Shown here: positions 690 to 62,586 of the stretch, in pieces
Position numbering within the stretch: position 1 is the stretch's first letter
How the letters are laid out: the number at the start of each line of letters is the position of its first letter
IMG/VR virus record: IMGVR_UViG_3300017971_000185
Span: 310,001 to 374,000 of that record
Reading direction: 5' to 3' (one strand)
Length of the DNA: 64,000 nucleotides
Position numbers and translations under genes: made by a program
Notes under the pieces: model-generated
The model's database searches: none
What the model was told of the DNA's origin: nothing
The model's input: only the letters and a program-made list of their open reading frames with translations

Positions 690-707
690 GTAGTGCGTCC
701 AGAACGC

Positions 708-781
708 GCGCTGAGAGGGGGTCGAACCCTCGACCTTCCGGGCGAATACCCCGGCTGCTCGGCCTACTGAGCTTCCAGCGC
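708..781 (-). ncRNA. tRNA-like cloverleaf with a non-canonical anticodon loop, in the 5' region of the Pth-like gene
   Basis: Acceptor GCGCTGG/TCAGCGC, D arm GCTC/GAGC, stem CCGGG/CCCGG with loop GTATTCG, T arm GAGGG-TTCGACC-CCCTC. Confidence 0.7.
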
Positions 782-3780: not shown

Positions 3781-3854
3781 GAGGACGTATCGGCCCAGTC
3801 TCCTAAACTGGCAAGCCGTAATGGATGATGGGGGTTCGAGTCCCTCCGTCCTCA
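3781..3854 (+). tRNA. atypical tRNA-Arg(CCT) lacking a normal D arm
   Basis: Acceptor GAGGACG/CGTCCTC, anticodon arm CCAGT-CTCCTAA-ACTGG, T arm GGGGG-TTCGAGT-CCCTC; D region reduced to TATCGGC. Confidence 0.65.
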
Positions 3855-14310: not shown

Positions 14311-14653
14311 TCGGTCGAGAGGATGAGGAGATCGCAGCCGCAAGGCTGAGGAAAGTCCGGGCTCCGTAGAGCAGCGTGCTTGGGAAATCCAAGTCGGGGC
14401 GACCCGCAGGAAAGTGCCGCAGAAAGCAAACCGCCGATGGCCTTCGGGCACAGGCAAGGGTGAAAGGGTGGGGTAAGAGCCCACCGGGTTCCTGGCGACA
14501 GGGATCGCATGGTAAACCCCACGCGGAGCAAGACAAACAGAGAGCGCTGAAGTTGCTCGCCTAGCTCTCGGGTTGTCGCAAAGATGAATGATCGCCACCT
14601 GGCAAGGGCAACCGACCCAGGGACAGAACCCGGCTTACGACCCTCTCGGCCGA
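14311..14653 (+). ncRNA. rnpB: RNase P RNA (bacterial type A)
   Basis: GAGGAAAGTCCGGGCTCC, GGAAAGTGCCGCAGAAA, GGTAAACCCCAC..GGAGCAAG and ACAGAACCCGGCTTA; P1 TCGGTCGAGAGG/CCTCTCGGCCGA. Confidence 0.95.
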
Positions 14654-32482: not shown

Positions 32483-32578
32483 ATGACGAAACGCACCACA
32501 ACAACAGCTATGCTCAGTGCCCGAGTGGCCCTGCATGGCTTTGTACGTCCAAATATGGACGATACGACCCCGTGTTGA
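32483..32578 (+). CDS. leader peptide MTKRTTTTAMLSARVALHGFVRPNMDDTTPC
   Basis: 7 Thr codons (ACG, ACC, ACA) plus GAC/GAT and GTA/GTG. Confidence 0.75.
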   Translation: MTKRTTTTAMLSARVALHGFVRPNMDDTTPC

Positions 32579-33049: not shown

Positions 33050-33094
33050 GACCCTTCCAGACTTCAACCCGCAACCCGAAAGGAGGACAATCTG

Positions 33095-33220
33095 ATGCCT
33101 GACGATGATGACGATGACGATGATCGCTTGCCCGCGTTGGTGAAGTCTGGTCTATCACGCTTGGTTGTCAGCCAAGAGGTCATGGGTTCAAATCCCATAC
33201 GCGGGGCTGGAGGTCCGTAA
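33095..33220 (+). CDS. leader peptide MPDDDDDDDDRL..., reading through tRNA-Asp
   Basis: SD AAGGAGG; 8 consecutive GAC/GAT codons ending 6 nt before tRNA-Asp. Confidence 0.8.
   Translation: MPDDDDDDDDRLPALVKSGLSRLVVSQEVMGSNPIRGAGGP
33131..33206 (+). tRNA. tRNA-Asp(GTC)
   Basis: Cloverleaf, loop TT-GTC-AG, G73. Confidence 0.9.
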
Positions 33221-39765: not shown

Positions 39766-39769
39766 GTTT

Positions 39770-39853
39770 TTCTCCCCGAGCGACGGCGCTTTCGCCAACT
39801 CCGTCAGGACCGGAAGGTAGCAGCGGTAACGGAGGACCGGGTGCTCGGGGGAA
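39770..39853 (+). ncRNA. ffs: small SRP RNA (4.5S-like)
   Basis: Helix-8 motif GTCAGGACCGGAAGGTAGCAGC inside a hairpin closed by CCCCGAGC/GCTCGGGG. Confidence 0.85.
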
Positions 39854-39905
39854 CGTTTCACCGAGCCGGGGTCGTCGGTGGGCGCTTATCGCCGCGGAGA
39901 GGCGT

Positions 39906-40087: not shown

Positions 40088-40156
40088 ATGGACGACGACA
40101 TTAGCGACATTATCCGACATGGGTTCGTAGCTCAGTTGGTTAGAGCGCTGCCCTGA
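40088..40156 (+). CDS. leader peptide MDDDISDIIRHGFVAQLVRALP, reading into tRNA-Ile
   Basis: ATT..ATT ATC ending 6 nt before tRNA-Ile(GAT); stop lies in the anticodon loop. Confidence 0.6.
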   Translation: MDDDISDIIRHGFVAQLVRALP

Positions 40157-40419: not shown

Positions 40420-40485
40420 AGGAGATCCATGACGCGCAAGATCACATACGATGAGCGAATGCCAAGGGCAGATCTACAGATCTGC

Positions 40486-40562
40486 ACCGGGATAGCTCAG
40501 GTGGTCAGAGCGGGGGTCTCATAATCCCCAGGTCGCCGGTTCAACTCCGGCTCCCGGTACCA
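40486..40562 (+). tRNA. elongator tRNA-Met(CAT)
   Basis: Cloverleaf with CCA. Confidence 0.88.
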
Positions 40563-40737: not shown

Positions 40738-41114
<377 letters not shown>

Positions 41115-43647: not shown

Positions 43648-43680
43648 ATGTCCGGTATCCGTCTGAAACGCAAGACCTAG
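43648..43680 (+). CDS. leader peptide MSGIRLKRKT (probably leaderless mRNA)
   Basis: Contains both AAA and AAG; pairs with the 5' end of tRNA-Lys. Confidence 0.65.
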   Translation: MSGIRLKRKT

Positions 43681-43719
43681 CCCGAGGGAAGTCCCCTTGG
43701 GCTGGTAGAAGTGCGTTTT

Positions 43720-43795
43720 GGGCCGGTAGCTCAGTAGGCAGAGCGGCGGACTCTTAATCCGCAGGTCGAGGGATCGTCACCCTCCCGGCTCTCCA
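43720..43795 (+). tRNA. tRNA-Lys(CTT) with atypical T loop ATCGTCA
   Basis: Cloverleaf with CCA. Confidence 0.88.
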
Positions 43796-56265: not shown

Positions 56266-56880
56266 ATGGCAATTACTCGGAGGGCTTTTGGCAAGCTGCT
56301 TGGAGCAGTAGGGGCGGCGCTCGGCACCGGCTTCGTTCCGTTGGATGTCCTGGCGCGTCCCTCTGTTCTGGAATCGCTCTTGCCGTTTGTGGGCACCTAC
56401 GAATTCCGTCGTCTCATTCCGCGTGAGAATTCGATTTACGGAGCCGTTTCCAACGATGGCTCAGAGATCTGGAAAACCATTGAAGGACGTGATCCTGAAT
56501 CAGGGATTCGCACACCCGGCACCCGCGAAACTACCACCCTTGCCAAAATGCTTGCGGGAACGTTCAAAACCTCACCAGACGGGACATTCGCCGTTGTCAT
56601 AGTTGGTCCCGGTCTGGCAGGCCACGCCAAGAACGTCCGAACGAAAGGCGTGCAAGTGGTGGTCGAGAAATCACAGCCGGACCGTGATGTGTTCGTGATT
56701 GCCGGACTCAACAAGCCGATCAAGGCTCTCGAAGATCTCGATCCGCGATGCCTGGCACGAGTCACGTTGGGGCATCATGGGCCTTTCATCGGAGCCACAC
56801 GCGACGATTACCCCACAGGATGGAAGGCTTCTAGGCCCTGGGCTCCAGTCCTGTTGTACCGGCCCGATCGGGGCAGTTGA
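56266..56880 (+). CDS. hypothetical protein with a Tat-like signal
   Basis: MAITRRAFGKLLGAVGAALG. Confidence 0.5.
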   Translation: MAITRRAFGKLLGAVGAALGTGFVPLDVLARPSVLESLLPFVGTYEFRRLIPRENSIYGAVSNDGSEIWKTIEGRDPESGIRTPGTRETTTLAKMLAGTFKTSPDGTFAVVIVGPGLAGHAKNVRTKGVQVVVEKSQPDRDVFVIAGLNKPIKALEDLDPRCLARVTLGHHGPFIGATRDDYPTGWKASRPWAPVLLYRPDRGS

Positions 56881-56883
56881 CGC

Positions 56884-56912
56884 TTGACAAGGGCTCAGAG
56901 GGCGCGTAGAGT
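56884..56912 (+). promoter_or_regulatory. sigma70-like promoter of the Arg/Ser/Gly/Ala/Trp/Cys tRNA operon
   Basis: TTGACA-N17-TAGAGT. Confidence 0.75.
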
Positions 56913-56927
56913 CTCCCTGAGGTCAAA

Positions 56928-57080
56928 ATGTTTACCCCAGTCCAAACCATCGTTGAGAACGCACGCTACGCAGCACCCGCCATTGCGGCTGCCGCCGCGG
57001 GATCGTGTGCCTCCGATTGGTCAGGACTCGGTACACGGCCCAGTAGTGGTGCTCTGTCCAGGCAGAGACGCTCCGTTTAG
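56928..57080 (+). CDS. leader peptide MFTPVQTIVENARYAAPAIAAAAAGSCASDWSGLGTRPSSGALSRQRRSV
   Basis: SD GAGGT; 11 Ala, 7 Ser, 4 Gly, plus TGT, TGG and AGG/AGA. Confidence 0.75.
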   Translation: MFTPVQTIVENARYAAPAIAAAAAGSCASDWSGLGTRPSSGALSRQRRSV

Positions 57081-57085
57081 CACGC

Positions 57086-57161
57086 GGGGCACTAGCTCAA
57101 AGGACAGAGCTTCCGGCTTCTAACCGGACGGGTGCGGGTTCAAATCCCGCGTGCCCTACCA
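57086..57161 (+). tRNA. tRNA-Arg(TCT)
   Basis: Cloverleaf with CCA. Confidence 0.92.
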
Positions 57162-57200
57162 CTACTGGGCGGAACCAAGGACGCCGCCCAACGACAACCT

Positions 57201-57289
57201 GGAGCGGTGGCCGAGTCTGGCTGAAGGCATCGCCCTGCTAAGGCGACATACCCGCAAGGGTATCGAGGGTTCAAATCCCTCCCGCTCCG
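57201..57289 (+). tRNA. tRNA-Ser(GCT)
   Basis: Type II cloverleaf. Confidence 0.93.
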
Positions 57290-57298
57290 CAAAATCAA

Positions 57299-57385
57299 GG
57301 AACGGTGGCCGAGTCTGGCTGAAGGCGCTCGACTGGAAATCGAGTGTAGGGAAACCTACCGGGGGTTCAAATCCCTCCCGTTCCG
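57299..57385 (+). tRNA. tRNA-Ser(GGA)
   Basis: Type II cloverleaf. Confidence 0.93.
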
Positions 57386-57402
57386 CCCGAAAGGAGAATC
57401 TA

Positions 57403-57641
<239 letters not shown>

Positions 57642-57673
57642 ACATTTTCACAACAACCCAAACCAAGAACCAA

Positions 57674-57762
57674 GGAGAGTTGGCCGAGTCTGGCTGAAGG
57701 CGTCGCATTCGAAATGCGAAGTGGGTGAAAGCTCACCAGGGGTTCGAATCCCTTACTCTCCG
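57674..57762 (+). tRNA. tRNA-Ser(CGA)
   Basis: Type II cloverleaf. Confidence 0.93.
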
Positions 57763-57767
57763 CCCAC

Positions 57768-57838
57768 GCGCGCGAAGTGTTATGGCTGCACGCTTCCCTG
57801 CCTAGGAAGAAGTAGGGGTTCGATTCCCCTTGCGCGCT
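57768..57838 (+). tRNA. tRNA-Gly(GCC)
   Basis: Cloverleaf, U73. Confidence 0.88.
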
Positions 57839-58100
57839 CGAAAGGAACAAGCCATGAACGAAGGAGGCAAGTAAGGAAAAACTGGCGTCAGTGCCGCCTA
57901 GAACGAAGGGAAGGAAGCTGCACAGTCGAGCACACATGCTGGTTGCCTGAGAAAGTGGTCAAGGTGGGGAAGGTCGTGAAGGTCATGGGGGCAACCTGGA
58001 AGATCACCGCAGCGTGGACAATCCTTTCGTACCGGCCCGACTGGCGAAGGGCTATCCGAAAGCATCGGCACGAAACAGGAGACGATCAACCGAAGAAGTC

Positions 58101-58172
58101 GCGTGTGTAGCTCAGTTGGCAGAGCATCAGCTTCCATGCTGAGGGTCGCGGGTTCGATCCCCGCCACATGCT
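58101..58172 (+). tRNA. tRNA-Gly-type body with a 6-nt anticodon loop (probably a defective Gly(CCC))
   Basis: TCAGC-TTCCAT-GCTGA. Confidence 0.65.
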
Positions 58173-58191
58173 CGAAAGGAAGAACATGAAC

Positions 58192-58264
58192 GCGGGAGTA
58201 GCTCAACTGGTAGAGCGTCAGCCTTCCAAGCTGAATGTAGCGGGTTCGACCCCCGTCTCCCGCT
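58192..58264 (+). tRNA. tRNA-Gly(TCC)
   Basis: Cloverleaf. Confidence 0.93.
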
Positions 58265-58267
58265 CAA

Positions 58268-58340
58268 GGGGCCTTAGCTCAGTTGGGAGAGCGGTGGCTT
58301 TGCAAGCCACAGGCCGCCGGTTCGATTCCGGCAGGCTCCA
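58268..58340 (+). tRNA. tRNA-Ala(TGC)
   Basis: G3:U70. Confidence 0.93.
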
Positions 58341-58559
58341 CGGAAGAACATGAGTCAACGAATCAACCATCGTCGGGAAGGAAAGAGGCATCAAGACAAC
58401 GGGCCTCGATGGAAGAGCAGAAACCCCATGGCGGGGGCAAACTCGACACACGTAGCACGCGCACGAAGGGGATGGCGAAACATCCTACGACGGAGGAAAA
58501 GGCGAAAGATCAAAGATGTGATTCAGCAGCATCTAGCCGAGATGGGGTAGTAGCGAACA

Positions 58560-58934
58560 ATGGCACAGATCACCAAAGAACAGGTCATTGACTATCTGGG
58601 GGCCCTCTCGCCTTCGGAAATGGCTATCCTCATCGAGAACCTGGAAGAGACGTGGGGCATGGAGATGTCCCGGCCAACTCAGCAAGCACCGAAGGTCGAG
58701 CAAGAGAAGGAGGAAGAACAGACGGAATTCGAGGTCATACTTGAGAGTTTCGGAGACAAGAAGATCGACGTGATCAAGACCGTTCGCCAGGAGAAGCCGG
58801 GGATGGGTCTCAAGGAAGCAAAGGAGTTTGTCGAGTCTGCGCCGGTTACGATCGGTGAGGCGCTCTCAAAGGAGGAAGCAGAGGAAGCCAAGGCCAAGCT
58901 GGAGGAGGCAGGCGCAACGATCACGATCAAGTAA
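58560..58934 (+). CDS. rplL: 50S ribosomal protein L7/L12
   Basis: EEQTEFEVIL..GDKKIDVIK.VR...GLKEAKEFVESAP..SKEEAE..KAKLEEAGA. Confidence 0.95.
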   Translation: MAQITKEQVIDYLGALSPSEMAILIENLEETWGMEMSRPTQQAPKVEQEKEEEQTEFEVILESFGDKKIDVIKTVRQEKPGMGLKEAKEFVESAPVTIGEALSKEEAEEAKAKLEEAGATITIK

Positions 58935-59007
58935 GGGGCAGTAGCTCAGATGGGAGAGCGCGTGTCTGGCAGACACGAAGTCAGGGGTTCGATCCCCCTC
59001 TGCTCCA
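58935..59007 (+). tRNA. tRNA-Ala(GGC)
   Basis: G3:U70. Confidence 0.93.
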
Positions 59008-59013
59008 CAATCA

Positions 59014-59072
59014 AGGGACGTAGCTCAATGGAAGAGTGCCGGAAGCTGCGGGTTCGAATCCCGTCGTCTCCA
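59014..59072 (+). ncRNA. anticodon-arm-less tRNA-Ala-like RNA
   Basis: Acceptor with G3:U70 and A73; D and T arms present; only GCCGGAAGCT between them. Confidence 0.65.
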
Positions 59073-59086
59073 CAAAGGCAAGCAAC

Positions 59087-59644
59087 ATGAGGAAGGACAA
59101 ACACACACGGACATCGAAGCTGTTGTCCATGCTTCTGCGCCATCGGCCAGAGGCCGCGGGTCTCGTGTTGGATGAGGCCGGCTGGGTTGGTGTGGATGAG
59201 TTGCTCGCGGGAATCGGGAACAAACGAGGATTCGAAGTGACTAAAGACTTGCTTCGGCAAGTCGTAGATACCAACAACAAGAGGAGGTTTGAATTCAACG
59301 AAGACGGGACCAAGATTAGAGCCAGACAAGGCCATAGCGTGCGTGTGGATCTGGGGCACGAAGCCCAGGAGCCGCCCGAGTACCTGTACCACGGAACGGC
59401 AACTCGAAACCTCGCAGCGATTCGCGAGGGAGGGCTTCAGAAGATGAGCCGACACGCGGTTCATCTCTCACTCGATCTACCAACGGCAACCAGTGTTGGA
59501 TCTCGGCACGGGAAGCCAGCCATTCTCAAGATCCGGGCGAAGCAGATGCACGATGATGGCCACGTGTTCTACCTGACGGAGAACAAGGTCTGGTACACCG
59601 ACAACATCCCCGTCGCCTACATCATCTTTCCAGAGGACTCGTGA
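59087..59644 (+). CDS. kptA: RNA 2'-phosphotransferase
   Basis: SKLLSMLLRH.P, KRRF, IRARQGHS, LYHGT, R.AVHLS. Confidence 0.95.
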   Translation: MRKDKHTRTSKLLSMLLRHRPEAAGLVLDEAGWVGVDELLAGIGNKRGFEVTKDLLRQVVDTNNKRRFEFNEDGTKIRARQGHSVRVDLGHEAQEPPEYLYHGTATRNLAAIREGGLQKMSRHAVHLSLDLPTATSVGSRHGKPAILKIRAKQMHDDGHVFYLTENKVWYTDNIPVAYIIFPEDS

Positions 59645-59719
59645 GGGGCAGTAGCTCAGTTTCGGGAGAGCGCCACGTTCGCAACGTGGAAGTCAGGGGT
59701 TCGATTCCCCTCTGCTCCA
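59645..59719 (+). tRNA. tRNA-Ala(CGC)
   Basis: G3:U70. Confidence 0.92.
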
Positions 59720-60034
59720 CAATATTTCGTCACCATCGAAAAGGACAGAAGGAACAACATGTAATCATCAACAAGGAGGTCGTCATCATGCGTACCGTAT
59801 ATGCAGACCTGAACATGCGTAACCGAACCCGTGACTGGAAGATCCCGCTCGGAGGCAATACCGTTTCCCTGCGTGCGATTGCAAAGCCGGGCACGGTGGT
59901 CCGTGTGACTGACGACGATCTAGAGGTCGAGGCTATGGTCGAGATCCGCAACGGGATGCTCGTTGCGGACGCCCGCTGGAACACGCTGGCGTATGTCCAC
60001 TAGACCAGGCCCGGCTAAGCAAGGAGGAAAGCGT

Positions 60035-60067
60035 ATGGAACACGAACGATGGCGAGGCTGTCCGTAA
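60035..60067 (+). CDS. leader peptide MEHERWRGCP
   Basis: SD AAGGAGG; TGG and TGT codons; stop lies in the loop of a GCTGTCC/GGACAGC hairpin, just before tRNA-Trp and tRNA-Cys. Confidence 0.7.
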   Translation: MEHERWRGCP

Positions 60068-60075
60068 GGACAGCT

Positions 60076-60148
60076 AGGGCGTTAGCTCAGTTGGGAGAGC
60101 GACGGACTCCAAATCCGTAGGTCGCGGGTTCGATCCCTGCACGCCCTG
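60076..60148 (+). tRNA. tRNA-Trp(CCA)
   Basis: Cloverleaf. Confidence 0.93.
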
Positions 60149-60152
60149 CCGC

Positions 60153-60224
60153 GGCTCCGTAGCCAAGTGGGAAGGTAGCGCTCTGCAAAAGCGCCATTCG
60201 TCGGTTCGACTCCGACCGGAGCCT
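60153..60224 (+). tRNA. tRNA-Cys(GCA)
   Basis: Cloverleaf, U73. Confidence 0.93.
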
Positions 60225-60295
60225 CCGCGATGAAACAACCGAACGACAACTAGCCCCCAGGGGTCTCGCTGCTCCTGGGCAACAGGAGCAAGACG

Positions 60296-60730
60296 ATGAC
60301 CAGCCTGGCATACAAGACTACCTACGACACTCTGACTACCGAGGGTCTCCCGAAGCGGGGGACTCGTGACTGGTACCTGGCAAAGCGAGCCAGGAAGCTG
60401 GGAAGGGTGAAGGGTCGGGGGCGAGTCGCCAAGTTTCGAGAGATCGCGCGGTACAAGCCCGTGTTGATTGCTGATCTTATTCTTGGGCGATTGCCCCGTA
60501 TCCTAGAGAGCGAATTCTGGTTCTACGTCTGGCACGTGGACGGTTTGTGCGTCTACTGCAAGGCCAAGCTCACCAAGCAAAACCACACTCTGGATCACGT
60601 AATCCCGCGTGCCCAGGGCGGTGGTCAGCTTGGTCGCCAGAACCTCATGCCCTGCTGTCAGGCGTGCAACTGGACCAAGGCCGACAAGCCTCTATTGGTG
60701 TTCCTGTCCGAGCGACTAGAACACCTTTAG
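60296..60730 (+). CDS. HNH endonuclease
   Basis: CVYC..TLDHVIPRAQGG..NLMPCCQACN..K. Confidence 0.85.
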   Translation: MTSLAYKTTYDTLTTEGLPKRGTRDWYLAKRARKLGRVKGRGRVAKFREIARYKPVLIADLILGRLPRILESEFWFYVWHVDGLCVYCKAKLTKQNHTLDHVIPRAQGGGQLGRQNLMPCCQACNWTKADKPLLVFLSERLEHL

Positions 60731-61114
60731 GATCTCGTTGATCGTGGCCTGCGTGTACTCTTCGACCGCATCACGGCCGGCAGACAGAGTATCGGGGCTA
60801 TTCGCTCCGGCGTCTCGATGCTTGTAGCCTACACGCTTGAGATTCTCCAGCGACTTGTGGACTGCACGCGCGAGCGCCTTGCCTAGCTTGTCGATCTCAT
60901 TGTTGCCTTTCACCAAGGCGGCGGTGAGATCGCGAGCGGCATCATGGGTGCCTTCGTAGTCCGAGTCGAGGCCCCATGCTTCGGGCTTGCTACGGTAGAT
61001 GCTCGGATACTGCGCTTGCTTGAGCAGCGGAAGGATCGCTTCTTGGATATTGGGGTTTTCGTGAGCCAGCCTGATCAACTGGCCGCGGAGGCTGCGTTTG
61101 CGTGTGCCTGCCAT
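60716..61114 (-). CDS. hypothetical protein with N-terminal LR..LIRLA...P.....LPLLK motif
   Basis: Motif shared with 2309..2998. Confidence 0.6.
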   Translation of the reverse strand: MAGTRKRSLRGQLIRLAHENPNIQEAILPLLKQAQYPSIYRSKPEAWGLDSDYEGTHDAARDLTAALVKGNNEIDKLGKALARAVHKSLENLKRVGYKHRDAGANSPDTLSAGRDAVEEYTQATINEILKVF

Positions 61115-61205
61115 GGTCTACCTACGGTGCGCGATAGGCGAATTAGGCGCGGGGTTTGCGCTGTAAACTTCTGTGGGAATCCCGCGTAGAGGGTCGGAGA
61201 GAGGA

Positions 61206-61598
61206 ATGGCAAGAACCACTTCAGATCCATGCGGCCGATGCGGCGGAAGCGGCTATCTTCCGCAGTATCGTCATGTCGAGGGCGGTGTTTGCTTTCGGTG
61301 CCGGGGAAGCGGCATTGATCCTGGGGGTCGCCGTGGGGGTCGCCGGGCCAAGAGGCTCTCAGACGAAGCCAGGGGCTTCCTGGCGGCGTTGGTGGAGAGC
61401 AGAATCTCGCTGCCCCCGCAAGAGCCGGAGCCGCTGGACGAGCTTCTGGGCGCTGGGCTCGTTGCTCCCGTGAGGGTGGTGGACAAGACCGGGAAAAAGC
61501 GCTCCGAGTACTACGCGACGGAGCGTGGGCACGAGAGCTATCAAAAGGCTGTAGAGGCGGGGTTGATTCGGGCCCGGCCAGGGGAATGGGTGCAGTGA
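61206..61598 (+). CDS. DnaJ-type CxxCxGxG zinc-finger protein
   Basis: CGRCGGSG..CFRCRGSG; directly after the phage promoter at 61162. Confidence 0.65.
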   Translation: MARTTSDPCGRCGGSGYLPQYRHVEGGVCFRCRGSGIDPGGRRGGRRAKRLSDEARGFLAALVESRISLPPQEPEPLDELLGAGLVAPVRVVDKTGKKRSEYYATERGHESYQKAVEAGLIRARPGEWVQ

Positions 61599-62586
61599 TG
61601 AAGATCCTTCCGTCCTATTTGAGAGCGAAAGCCCTCGATGCGCTGGCACGGCTTGACGGCTTGCCGCCTTACGATGGGCCTTCCAACATCTGTCGGAACG
61701 ACGGCTACTACGCGCAGTCCATCGAACAGACGTTTGGCATGTCCATCGTGGATCTGCGCAAGAGTGTGGAGAGAGACAATGGATGACGTAGCTCGAATTC
61801 GTGAGGCGCAGGAGCATCTCTACGTTGCTGTCCTGCAATCGCTCAAGACGGATGATGACATCATCATGGGGCACGTTCGCGATGCTCTGGATCAACTGGA
61901 TCAGGTTCTCGGCGGCAACTATCCGGCGCGAACCCGTGAGATGCTCGAAAGGAAGGGGCTGAGATGAGCGAGTCACCGAGAGGTAGTATCAAGTCTCCGA
62001 TTCGTCCGTTTGGCGACGCTTATTGGGAGCGAGTCGAGCGCAGCAGGGACGGACAGACAGGAGCCGAATGTTGTCTTTGCGGCAGACCGGGACGTGGTGT
62101 TGGTCGTTTCTTCATCGCGATTGATCTGGGCGATCATTCGCTCTATCCGGCCACTTTCGACGTGGATACTCTGGGTGGAGACTTCTCTGTTGAGCGCGTA
62201 GGGAGCACTTGTGCTCGGAAACTTCGCGGGCTCGGGGCGCTACGCGACGTAGACGGAAACCCTGTGGATTGAGACCCGGATCAGGCGTAGAATCCACTGA
62301 TGCTGCGCCGATTCCGACAGTGGGTTCGCCAATGGCTCGACGTTCCGACTGTGGGGCGTGAGTCCGAGGACTTTGCTCGGAGTGAGACAATGGCTGTAGT
62401 GGGTGCTCTGGTGCAGCAGTGTCCCTCGTTGATCTACTATCCTGAGCTTATTCGCTTCATGGTCGGCGGCATCGGCGGCATCAACGGAATCTACGAGTTT
62501 ACCCACGTGGCGACTGGCCGCTGGGTCTGGACCGGAGGCCGCTGGGTTCACGAGTCGCGGCAGAAACCGGGTCTGAAGGTGGTGAA

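What the first reader, a model, noticed from the sequence alone, without database searches (positions are those of the whole stretch)
60021..60224. Trp+Cys mini-leader directly before tRNA-Trp and tRNA-Cys
A perfect SD (AAGGAGG) precedes MEHERWRGCP. Two of the rarest amino acids appear in ten codons, in the same order as the two tRNAs that follow. The stop sits in a GTAA tetraloop hairpin that ends next to tRNA-Trp.
Basis: partly seen in the sequence, partly recalled or inferred. Interest (0 to 1): 0.65.

Follow-up and report, generated by a model that had tools for sequence, protein, structure and literature searches.

The report
Conserved mini-gene abutting phage tRNA-Trp
A ten-codon mini-gene ending in Arg-Trp-Arg-Gly-Cys, whose end is folded into a hairpin that touches the start of tRNA-Trp and tRNA-Cys, is kept in seven lineages of one clade of huge phages. 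It probably links translation to the maturation of those two tRNAs, which would be a new kind of control, but its function is untested.

Summary
The window lies in a 497-kb phage record whose 46 tRNA genes form one array. Seven diverged lineages of this clade all keep the Shine-Dalgarno site, an ATG 7-9 nt after it, a 10-12-codon frame ending in R-W-R-G-C-x-stop, a hairpin carrying the Cys and stop codons that ends 0-2 nt before tRNA-Trp, and then tRNA-Cys. In the five core codons only third positions vary. All three changes are synonymous and compensated in the hairpin's other arm. N-terminal length changes by whole codons. So this is a translated leader fused to a selected RNA structure, not chance. 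It is not a classical attenuator: there is one W and one C codon, no terminator and no alternative hairpins. The UGG codon plus C can also pair with the tRNA's 3' G-C-C/U-R end, a pairing known to slow RNase P, so UGG has a rival RNA-level explanation. My best reading is that a ribosome on the leader melts the structure over the RNase P site, so decoding of UGG and UGY gates maturation of tRNA-Trp and tRNA-Cys. That reading is inference. I found the element only in this clade. Similar cognate-rich mini-frames precede the Asp, His, Ile, Thr and Met tRNAs, but the statistics for them are weak apart from Asp.

The parts
59788..60003 (+). Upstream 71-aa ORF of unknown function with its own SD. It was used as an unbiased handle to find homologous loci.
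   Evidence: No Pfam match. The AlphaFold2 model is poor, pLDDT 63. Distant homologues sit beside tRNA-Ala arrays without the leader or tRNA-Trp.
60021..60027 (+). Shine-Dalgarno site AAGGAGG of the mini-ORF.
   Evidence: It is kept in 7 of 7 lineages (GGAGG in L041), while the 7-9-nt spacer to the ATG varies in sequence.
60035..60067 (+). Mini-ORF MEHERWRGCP* (10 codons plus TAA).
   Evidence: Homologues have 10-12 codons, always in frame, and always end R-W-R-G-C-x-stop.
60047..60061 (+). Invariant core codons CGA TGG CGA GGC TGT (R-W-R-G-C).
   Evidence: None of 10 non-third positions vary and 3 of 5 third positions vary over seven lineages (one-sided Fisher p = 0.022). In the neighbouring ORF only 2 of 16 fourfold sites are invariant.
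60050..60053 (+). Leader UGGC, the 5' strand of a possible 4-bp helix with the 3' end of tRNA-Trp.
   Evidence: RNAalifold. All cells are paired in 6 of 6 lineages, with one-sided changes only. The helix is present in the window's minimum-free-energy fold.
60056..60075 (+). Hairpin: 5' arm 60056-60063 (Gly, Cys and part of the Pro codon), loop 60064-60067 (the stop codon 60065-60067 fills its last three bases), 3' arm 60068-60075. It ends at position -1 of tRNA-Trp.
   Evidence: Three pairs show compensatory double changes. 92% of cells are paired, against at most 65% when the 3' partners are slid. The covariation score is reached by 1 of 500 shuffles.
60076..60150 (+). tRNA-Trp (anticodon CCA).
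   Evidence: ARAGORN; Rfam 67.5 bits.
60148..60151 (+). G73-C-C-G, the discriminator plus an RCCA-like 3' end. It is the 3' strand of the possible helix with leader UGGC.
   Evidence: The variants are GCCG, GCUG and GCCA, and all can pair.
60153..60226 (+). tRNA-Cys (anticodon GCA), 2 nt after tRNA-Trp.
   Evidence: It follows tRNA-Trp in every lineage whose contig reaches that far, with a spacer of 0-60 nt.
60296..60730 (+). HNH endonuclease gene downstream (context only).
   Evidence: Pfam PF01844, E = 2.4e-10.

Best explanation
This is a translated 10-12-codon leader ORF whose 3' half is built into the RNA structure that sits on the RNase P cleavage site of tRNA-Trp. Two structures are involved. 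One is a covarying 8-9-bp hairpin that carries the Cys codon and the stop codon and ends 0-2 nt before tRNA position +1. The other is probably a short helix between the UGG codon plus C and the tRNA's 3' G73-C-C/U-R end. A ribosome decoding UGG, UGY or the stop must melt these helices, so translation and the closed junction are mutually exclusive. The proposed mechanism runs as follows. In the closed form the 5' leader is double-stranded up to the cleavage site and the RCCA-like end is sequestered, which is a poor RNase P substrate. A ribosome that dwells on UGG or UGY, as it would when charged tRNA-Trp or tRNA-Cys is scarce, holds the 5' arm and leaves the 3' arm and the tRNA 3' end single-stranded. 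tRNA-Trp and the adjoining tRNA-Cys are then matured faster. Fast read-through and release let the junction close again. This is a homeostat at the level of RNA processing, not of transcription termination. What is shown: conservation of the SD, ATG, frame, core peptide, stop position and hairpin; covariation in the hairpin; and the geometry. What is inferred: that the ORF is translated, that the closed junction slows RNase P, and that the input is Trp/Cys decoding speed. I put about 0.6 on the first layer (a translated leader that competes with a structure at the RNase P site) and about 0.3-0.35 on the whole chain including Trp/Cys sensing.
For: Seven lineages were recovered through the flanking 71-aa ORF, which is 63-89% identical among them. 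All keep the SD, an ATG at 7-9 nt, and an in-frame 10-12-codon ORF ending RWRGC-x-stop. N-terminal length differs by 0, 1 or 2 whole codons. Variation in the core is confined to third positions (p = 0.022), while neighbouring fourfold sites are near saturation, with only 2 of 16 invariant. All three substitutions are compensated in the 3' arm: A:U to G:C, C:G to U:A, and U:A to C:G. The stop codon (TAA, TGA or TAG) always lies at the junction of the loop and the 3' arm, and the hairpin ends 0-2 nt before tRNA +1. Leader UGGC can pair with the 3' GCCG, GCUG or GCCA in 6 of 6 lineages. [quoted passage not shown] W and C are the two rarest residues, at 1.5% and 1.3%, and P(both in a five-residue core) is 0.004. 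Distant homologues of the flanking ORF lack the leader exactly where they lack tRNA-Trp and tRNA-Cys, so the leader travels with the tRNAs. The same genome has cognate-rich mini-frames before tRNA-Asp (p < 5e-6), tRNA-His (p = 0.009) and tRNA-Ile (p = 0.04).
Against: There is no expression, ribosome or RNA-end data, because no RNA run holds the phage. There is only one W and one C codon, whereas known amino-acid-sensing leaders use runs of codons. R, R and G are as invariant as W and C, which a pure codon sensor does not require. The unpaired GAA-CGA codons show no synonymous change in 6-7 of 7 lineages, which points to an additional constraint at the RNA or codon level. The UGGC:GCCR helix has only 4 bp, two of them wobble pairs in three lineages. 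It shows no double compensatory change, and it appears in the single-sequence minimum-free-energy fold only for the window. The genome-wide test of cognate enrichment before all 29 tRNA groups is not significant overall (Fisher p = 0.44; label permutation p = 0.023, driven by Asp). The element is confined to one clade.
Confidence: 0.35

Rival explanations
1. Nascent-peptide arrest leader. The invariant C-terminal R-W-R-G-C-x makes the ribosome stall at or just before the stop codon, either constitutively or in response to a small molecule, as TnaC does with free tryptophan. The stalled ribosome holds the hairpin open or covers the RNase P site. On this reading W and C matter as residues in the exit tunnel, not as codons that report tRNA supply.
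For: The whole pentapeptide, not only W and C, is invariant. Its distance to the stop is fixed at one residue in 7 of 7 lineages. The N-terminus varies freely in sequence and length, and the stop codon identity varies. This is the usual conservation pattern of arrest peptides (my own knowledge of TnaC, SecM and Erm leaders). R-W-R also fits the '+x+' shape of drug-dependent arrest motifs (own knowledge).
Against: I recognise no sequence similarity to any characterised arrest motif. The residue in the P site at termination is not conserved (P, R, L or A). R2, G and C are also constrained by the hairpin, so their invariance is not independent evidence for a peptide role. No stalling data exist.
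Confidence: 0.2
2. An RNA-only processing or stability element. After RNase P cuts at tRNA +1, the hairpin is the 3'-terminal stem-loop that protects the upstream mRNA (the 71-aa ORF) from 3' exonucleases, or it defines the RNase P site. UGGC is kept for pairing with the RCCA-like end. The open reading frame is incidental or serves only to stop ribosomes before the tRNA.
For: There is strong covariation in the hairpin. Other tRNAs in the array also have stems ending at -1 to -3: Met at 40486, Lys at 43720 and Phe at 41042. Protein-gene stop codons abut tRNA +1 elsewhere, at 58934|58935 and 59644|59645, so the tRNAs are cut out of mRNAs. The unpaired GAA-CGA shows no synonymous variation.
Against: The SD and the ATG are invariant while the spacer between them varies. 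All indels are whole codons. All substitutions in the 5' arm fall on third positions and are synonymous (p = 0.022). The stop is kept at the same structural position with three different stop codons. An RNA-only element needs none of these.
Confidence: 0.2
3. A classical trp-type transcription attenuator. Ribosome stalling at the W and C codons chooses between an antiterminator and a terminator, and so sets transcription into tRNA-Trp and tRNA-Cys.
For: It is a short SD-led ORF with a Trp codon, and its stop is next to a hairpin upstream of Trp-related genes.
Against: There is a single hairpin, no U-run after it (the tRNA starts 0-2 nt later), no alternative pairing partner, and no terminator-like site on the + strand in 56500-62000. 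There is one W codon and one C codon rather than tandem codons.
Confidence: 0.04
4. A free 10-12-residue micropeptide with a trans function (for example metal or thiol chemistry through Cys), merely encoded next to the tRNAs.
For: There is a conserved C-terminal motif with a good ribosome-binding site.
Against: It is very short, its N-terminus is unconstrained, and the motif overlaps a selected RNA hairpin. It is strictly linked to tRNA-Trp and tRNA-Cys and absent wherever they are absent. RWRGC is not found before tRNAs anywhere else.
Confidence: 0.05
5. A chance ORF in a conserved spacer.
For: The window copy alone is statistically unremarkable.
Against: Conservation is heterogeneous: there is a 14-nt invariant block next to variable N-terminal codons. 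The frame, SD, ATG and stop are kept in seven lineages whose synonymous sites are otherwise close to saturation.
Confidence: 0.03

Closest known systems
Ribosome-mediated attenuation leaders (E. coli trpL and relatives)
   Same: A short SD-led ORF carries codons for the amino acid to which the downstream genes relate. The end of the ORF is embedded in RNA secondary structure, so ribosome position decides RNA folding.
   Different: The downstream genes are tRNAs, not biosynthetic genes. There is one W and one C codon, not tandem runs. There is no terminator, no U-tract and no antiterminator alternative. The whole pentapeptide is conserved. The plausible output is RNase P processing, not transcription termination.
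Regulatory nascent-peptide arrest leaders (TnaC, SecM, Erm leader peptides)
   Same: The ORF is tiny, with a variable N-terminus and an invariant C-terminal motif at a fixed distance from the stall or stop site. It contains a conserved Trp. A ribosome held on the leader would remodel the downstream RNA.
   Different: I recognise no sequence similarity to a characterised arrest motif. The last residue is not conserved. The target is a pre-tRNA junction rather than a Rho site, an SD site or a secretion signal. Arrest has not been shown.
[quoted passage not shown]
   Same: Leader nucleotides complementary to G73-C74-C75-A76 extend the acceptor helix. Such pairing lowers RNase P kcat/Km in E. coli.
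   Different: The pairing strand lies about 23-28 nt upstream (23-26 nt in the window) and is separated from the cleavage site by a hairpin, giving a three-way junction. It coincides with a Trp codon inside a translated frame. In three lineages the 3' end is GCUG, so two of the pairs are wobble pairs.
T-box riboswitches
   Same: The concept is shared: a cis element that reads the state of a specific tRNA and controls genes of the same amino-acid system.
   Different: A T-box is a roughly 200-nt untranslated RNA that binds the tRNA directly. Nothing of the kind is present here, the spacer is 72 nt, and the element is translated.

Membership tests
trp-type leader-peptide transcription attenuator | Short translated ORF with its own ribosome-binding site in the leader | tested here: met
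   The SD, an ATG at 7-9 nt, the frame and the stop are kept in 7 of 7 lineages. Translation itself has not been observed.
trp-type leader-peptide transcription attenuator | Several (usually tandem) codons of the regulatory amino acid | tested here: not met
   There is one UGG and one UGY codon in every lineage.
trp-type leader-peptide transcription attenuator | Mutually exclusive antiterminator and intrinsic terminator (hairpin plus U-run) | tested here: not met
   There is a single hairpin followed by tRNA +1 after 0-2 nt, and no U-run. No terminator-like site lies on the + strand.
trp-type leader-peptide transcription attenuator | Response of downstream expression to starvation for the amino acid | not testable with these tools
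   No RNA run holds the phage.
Nascent-peptide arrest leader | Conserved C-terminal peptide at a fixed distance from the stall or stop codon, with a variable N-terminus | tested here: met
   RWRGC-x-stop occurs in 7 of 7 lineages, and the N-terminus varies in sequence and length.
Nascent-peptide arrest leader | Demonstrated ribosome arrest (toeprint, peptidyl-tRNA accumulation) | not testable with these tools
   This needs in vitro translation.
Nascent-peptide arrest leader | Constraint on the peptide that is separable from constraint on the RNA | tested here: inconclusive
   Variation only at third positions (p = 0.022) favours a coding constraint. However, R2, G and C lie in the hairpin arm, and UGG can pair with the tRNA 3' end.
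T-box riboswitch or any Rfam cis-regulatory family | Match to the family covariance model | tested here: not met
   In 59700-60320 only the two tRNAs match, and nothing in the leader reaches E <= 10.
Pre-tRNA with 5' leader-3' RCCA pairing | Leader bases complementary to the discriminator plus CCA | tested here: met
   UGGC pairs with GCCG, GCUG or GCCA in 6 of 6 lineages, with 100% of cells paired.
Pre-tRNA with 5' leader-3' RCCA pairing | The pairing directly extends the acceptor stem from N(-1)/N(-2) | tested here: not met
   The pairing strand is separated from position +1 by the 20-nt hairpin.
Pre-tRNA with 5' leader-3' RCCA pairing | Reduced RNase P cleavage | not testable with these tools
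   This needs an enzyme assay.
Intrinsic terminator of the upstream ORF | GC-rich stem followed by a U-run | tested here: not met
   and the sequence.

The most novel reading that the evidence does not exclude
In this clade of huge phages, the tRNA genes in the array are individually gated by tiny translated leaders that carry the codon or codons read by the tRNA behind them. Candidates are W and C before tRNA-Trp/Cys, eight D before tRNA-Asp, HHH before tRNA-His, I-x-x-I-I before tRNA-Ile, TT before the tRNA-Thr cluster, DER-M before tRNA-Met, and Y-A-Y before tRNA-Tyr in a relative. Several of these begin with an acidic tract of the kind known to destabilise ribosomes. Ribosome dwell time on the cognate codon would then decide whether the pre-tRNA junction is open for RNase P. 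This would be a virus-encoded, amino-acid-specific feedback on tRNA maturation, a type of control not described for any tRNA gene.
Probability: 0.15. Interest if true: 0.9.

Novelty: new variant of a known kind. Interest (0 to 1): 0.62.

Why it matters
Leader peptides are known to control amino-acid biosynthesis, aminoacyl-tRNA synthetase genes and resistance genes. I found no report of a translated leader in front of a tRNA gene in two full-text searches, and I know of none. Huge phages carry near-complete tRNA sets, and how they dose these tRNAs is unknown. If the ribosome itself gates RNase P access to a pre-tRNA according to how well the matching codon is decoded, that would be a new and very compact feedback principle. 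It would also be a simple design for synthetic control of tRNA supply. Even on the most sober reading, the locus is a clean natural example of 15 nucleotides under simultaneous selection for a peptide and for an RNA helix, placed exactly on an RNase P site.

Tried and rejected
1. Expression data. The look-up of sequencing runs lists only DNA holders, from sediment and seawater metagenomes.

2. Known RNA families. Nothing in the leader matches.

3. Promoter and terminator scan. Nothing lies near the leader.

4. Folding energy of the spacer. It is not better than shuffles. The case for the hairpin rests on covariation, not on energy.

5. Generality of cognate leaders within the genome. Label permutation gives p = 0.023, close to the floor set by the single Asp case. 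With a genome-wide null, only Asp (p < 5e-6), His (p = 0.009) and Ile (p = 0.04) stand out. Trp alone gives 0.57, and Fisher's combined p is 0.44. A post-hoc 'acidic tract then cognate residue' motif gives p = 0.01-0.05 and also picks up two incidental hits. I therefore keep this only as a hypothesis.

6. Generality outside the clade. Three IMG/VR scans, for MDDD before a tRNA, for five Asp codons before a tRNA and for RWRGC plus a tRNA start (and 90/91), return only this clade plus chance hits.

7. The unbiased metagenome scan with the tRNA-Trp 5' half returned mostly bacterial rpmG-tRNA-Trp loci without any leader.

8. The 56-aa ORF next to tRNA-His was tried as a handle for homologues of the other leaders. 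No homologue was found.

9. The AlphaFold2 model of the flanking 71-aa ORF is of low confidence (pLDDT 63), so I ran no fold search.

10. The idea that the mini-ORF is a remnant of rpmG, which precedes tRNA-Trp in bacteria, is rejected: there is no similarity to the L33 C-terminus seen.

11. Sequestration of the SD by a CCUCC in the 3' arm is rejected: that sequence is present in only some lineages.

Full report
**Context.** The window is bases 310001-374000 of a 497-kb IMG/VR virus record that CheckV rates 94% complete. All 46 of its tRNA genes lie within about 66 kb and are grouped by amino acid. A bacterial-type RNase P RNA and an SRP RNA lie in the same stretch, as do an L7/L12 homologue and a Tpt1 RNA 2'-phosphotransferase. 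The tRNAs are packed between small ORFs on one strand. Two protein genes end exactly at position -1 of a tRNA (58934|58935 and 59644|59645), so the tRNAs must be cut out of mRNA-like transcripts. The phage recurs in sediment and seawater metagenomes from nine studies, all of them DNA runs.

**Observation.**
- AAGGAGG lies at 60021-60027 and ATG at 60035.
- The frame reads MEHERWRGCP, with TAA at 60065-60067.
- An 8-bp stem spans 60056-60063 and 60068-60075, and its GUAA loop holds the stop.
- tRNA-Trp starts at 60076 and tRNA-Cys at 60153.

Taken alone, this copy is not statistically striking. AAGGAGG occurs 102 times in the genome and mostly has no gene after it. The spacer folds no better than shuffles. 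One W near a tRNA is common (p = 0.57). From the phage's own codon usage (W 1.5%, C 1.3%), the chance that nine codons hold both residues is 0.013.

**Conservation.** I retrieved homologous loci through the flanking 71-aa ORF, so the search did not select on the leader. The sources were IMG/VR, the 5.8-billion-protein collection and the contigs that encode those proteins. This gave seven distinct lineages whose flanking ORFs are 63-89% identical and whose third codon positions are 45-87% identical in pairwise comparisons. All seven have the SD, an ATG 7-9 nt after it, and a 10-12-codon frame:
- window: MEHERWRGCP
- L103: MEHERWRGCR
- L044: MKHERWRGCL
- L011: MTRTERWRGCR
- L101: MKRIDERWRGCP
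- L042: MNGIDERWRGCP
- L041: MNHTNTRWRGCA

The stop codon is TAA, TGA or TAG and always lies at the junction of the loop and the 3' arm of a hairpin. That hairpin ends 0-2 nt before tRNA-Trp, and tRNA-Cys follows wherever the contig reaches that far. An eighth contig (L102) diverges inside the SD and may be chimeric.

**Coding signal.** The N-terminal part varies in sequence, and its length differs only by whole codons. In the core CGA-TGG-CGA-GGC-TGT, none of the 10 non-third positions varies and 3 of the 5 third positions vary (one-sided Fisher p = 0.022). The three changes are CGA to CGG, GGC to GGU and UGU to UGC, and all are synonymous. In the neighbouring ORF only 2 of 16 fourfold-degenerate sites are invariant over the same lineages, so the 14-nt invariant block is not due to lack of divergence. 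The SD and ATG are fixed while the spacer between them varies. Together these points make a translated ORF the most economical reading.

**RNA signal.** The same three substitutions lie in the 5' arm of the hairpin, and each is matched by a change in the 3' arm. RNAalifold and explicit pair counting give three pairs with compensatory double changes. They also give 92% of cells paired, against at most 65% when the 3' partners are slid, and a covariation score reached by 1 of 500 shuffles. The few 'unpaired' cells come mostly from the window sequence, which MAFFT places one column out of register because its loop has 4 nt. The hairpin is therefore selected as a structure, while its loop (GUAA, 3 nt or 5 nt) is not.

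RNAalifold also proposes that leader UGGC (60050-60053, the Trp codon plus C) pairs with the discriminator and RCCA-like end of tRNA-Trp (60148-60151). The 3' variants GCCG, GCUG and GCCA all pair in 6 of 6 lineages, but only one-sided changes are seen. The helix appears in the single-sequence minimum-free-energy fold only for the window, so I rate it as possible. It matters because pairing between the leader and the RCCA end is known to slow bacterial RNase P (PMC9433436), and because it offers an RNA-level reason for keeping UGG.

**What it is not.** There is no U-run, no second hairpin and no terminator-like site. There are no tandem regulatory codons. No Rfam family, T-box included, matches the leader. 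Classical attenuation is therefore excluded by the anatomy. The element is also not tied to the flanking ORF. More distant homologues of that ORF, found with a profile search, sit after tRNA-Ala arrays and before an HNH gene or a terminator, without the leader and without tRNA-Trp or tRNA-Cys. So the leader travels with the two tRNAs. Bacterial tRNA-Trp genes with the same 5' half lie after rpmG and have no such leader. RWRGC followed by a tRNA start was found nowhere else in IMG/VR, nor in the 120 bacterial-genome places returned.

**Mechanism (inference).** A bacterial ribosome unwinds mRNA to about 11-13 nt downstream of the first base of the P-site codon (established knowledge of ribosome helicase geometry; own knowledge).
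- With UGG in the A site, the UGGC strand and the first half of the 5' arm are inside the ribosome.
- With UGU in the A site, the whole 5' arm and the loop are inside.
- With the stop in the A site, the ribosome reaches position +1 of the tRNA.

A ribosome pausing at UGG or UGU would thus free the 3' arm and the tRNA 3' end. That gives RNase P the single-stranded leader it prefers. Without a ribosome, the cleavage site sits in a three-way junction. This yields negative feedback: a shortage of charged tRNA-Trp or tRNA-Cys leads to faster maturation of exactly those tRNAs.

I favour this model because it uses every conserved feature: the SD, ATG and frame, the W and C codons, the stop inside the hairpin, the abutment on +1, and the complementarity to the RCCA end. 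Its weak points are the single codons, the equally invariant R, R and G, and the lack of synonymous change in the unpaired GAA-CGA codons. The two main rivals are an arrest-peptide mechanism, in which RWRGC acts in the exit tunnel, and an RNA-only role in processing or mRNA 3'-end protection. They remain serious and are scored accordingly.

**A wider pattern?** In the same array, other mini-frames directly upstream of tRNAs are rich in the cognate residue:
- MPDDDDDDDDRL, with a perfect SD, reads into tRNA-Asp.
- ..TDDEPHHHTY precedes tRNA-His.
- MDDDISDIIRH precedes tRNA-Ile.
- MDDTTPC* lies 78 nt before three tRNA-Thr genes.
- MTRKITYDERM.., with an SD and a 7-bp hairpin abutting +1, precedes a tRNA-Met.
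- In the relative G001, MDDDNYAYSS precedes tRNA-Tyr.

Several of these share an acidic tract before the cognate codon. Acidic N-terminal tracts are known to destabilise translating ribosomes (PMC9718836; 10.1101/2021.02.02.429294), which could sharpen a pause sensor.

The statistics do not carry this yet. Asp is extreme (p < 5e-6), His gives 0.009 and Ile 0.04, but the remaining 26 groups show nothing, and the combined tests are weak or post hoc. The relatives in hand lack these tRNAs, so conservation could not be checked. IMG/VR-wide scans found no such leaders outside the clade. I report this as the novel case, not as a finding.

**Verdict.** The feature is real, conserved and under dual selection for a peptide and an RNA structure. 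It is best filed as a new variant of leader-ORF cis-regulation, attached for the first time, as far as I could find, to tRNA genes, with RNase P processing as the likely output.

Noticed in passing
window 33075-33130 (tRNA-Asp at 33131): A perfect SD (AAGGAGG) is followed, 8 nt later, by an ATG at 33095 and the frame MPDDDDDDDDRL. The eight Asp codons mix GAC and GAT. The frame runs without a stop into tRNA-Asp. Against random genome positions, p < 5e-6. Across IMG/VR, five Asp codons before a tRNA were otherwise found only before a tRNA-Tyr and a tRNA-Met.
   Followed up: partly
window 40088-40120, 40738-40785, 32555-32578, 40429-40485; L039:9495-9537: Mini-frames before other tRNAs hold an acidic tract followed by the cognate residue. 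They are MDDDISDIIRH before tRNA-Ile..TDDEPHHHTY before tRNA-His, MDDTTPC* before three tRNA-Thr genes, and MTRKITYDERM.. before tRNA-Met (with an SD and a 7-bp hairpin ending at -1). In the relative G001, MDDDNYAYSS precedes tRNA-Tyr. A post-hoc motif test gives p = 0.01-0.05. Conservation could not be tested.
   Followed up: partly
window 56928-57080 (tRNA-Arg UCU at 57086): A 50-aa ORF ends ..SRQRRSV* 5 nt before tRNA-Arg(UCU). The Arg codons are AGG, AGA and CGC, and the two AGR codons together make up about 17% of this phage's Arg codons. A small hairpin overlaps the AGA codon. The C-terminus is kept in L040 and in L044, where one codon is deleted in frame.
   Followed up: partly
window 58932-58935 and 59642-59645: The stop codons of the L7/L12 homologue and of Tpt1 lie directly at position -1 of tRNA-Ala(GGC) and tRNA-Ala(CGC). 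RNase P cleavage would therefore end these mRNAs exactly at their stop codons.
   Followed up: no
window 40468-40485, 43660-43719, 40990-41039: Other stems end 0-3 nt before a tRNA 5' end: tRNA-Met at 40486, tRNA-Lys at 43720 and tRNA-Phe at 41042. Abutting hairpins may be a recurrent feature of this array.
   Followed up: no
window 14315-14653, 39767-39859, 58560-58934, 59036-59644: The phage encodes a class A RNase P RNA (247 bits), a small SRP RNA, a ribosomal protein L7/L12 homologue and a Tpt1/KptA RNA 2'-phosphotransferase inside the tRNA array.
   Followed up: no
window 60044-60049 and homologues: The unpaired codons GAA-CGA just before UGG show no synonymous change (GAA in 6 of 7 lineages, CGA in 7 of 7), although neighbouring fourfold sites are nearly saturated. 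This is unexplained; I found no pairing partner.
   Followed up: partly
L138:2137-3176; L136:43-660: Distant homologues of the 71-aa ORF lie directly after tRNA-Ala or tRNA-Gly arrays. In one 792-kb bacterial contig the homologue lies before an HNH gene. None has the leader, tRNA-Trp or tRNA-Cys. The tRNA-Ala / ORF71 / HNH module looks older than the Trp-Cys insertion.
   Followed up: partly
L063:1790-1978 and L073:435-623: In an unrelated phage fragment of lower GC content, a 62-aa ORF ends ..TEGWRKYVGCD* 6 nt before a tRNA-Trp with the same 5' half. It has W and C near the stop again. This may be coincidence, and its other tRNAs show no cognate leaders.
   Followed up: partly
window 58101-58173, 706-781 (-), 59014-59072, 3781-3854: There are several odd tRNA calls. 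ARAGORN reports a two-base anticodon 'cc' for a tRNA that Rfam scores at 58.8 bits (probably Gly-CCC). It also reports a tRNA-Asn(ATT) on the minus strand. Rfam reports two extra tRNA-like hits that ARAGORN does not call.
   Followed up: no
L042:2865-2938: One lineage carries a second tRNA-Trp upstream of the 71-aa ORF. It is preceded by an SD and MNALPII.., a frame that runs into the tRNA. It has no RWRGC leader and no hairpin.
   Followed up: no
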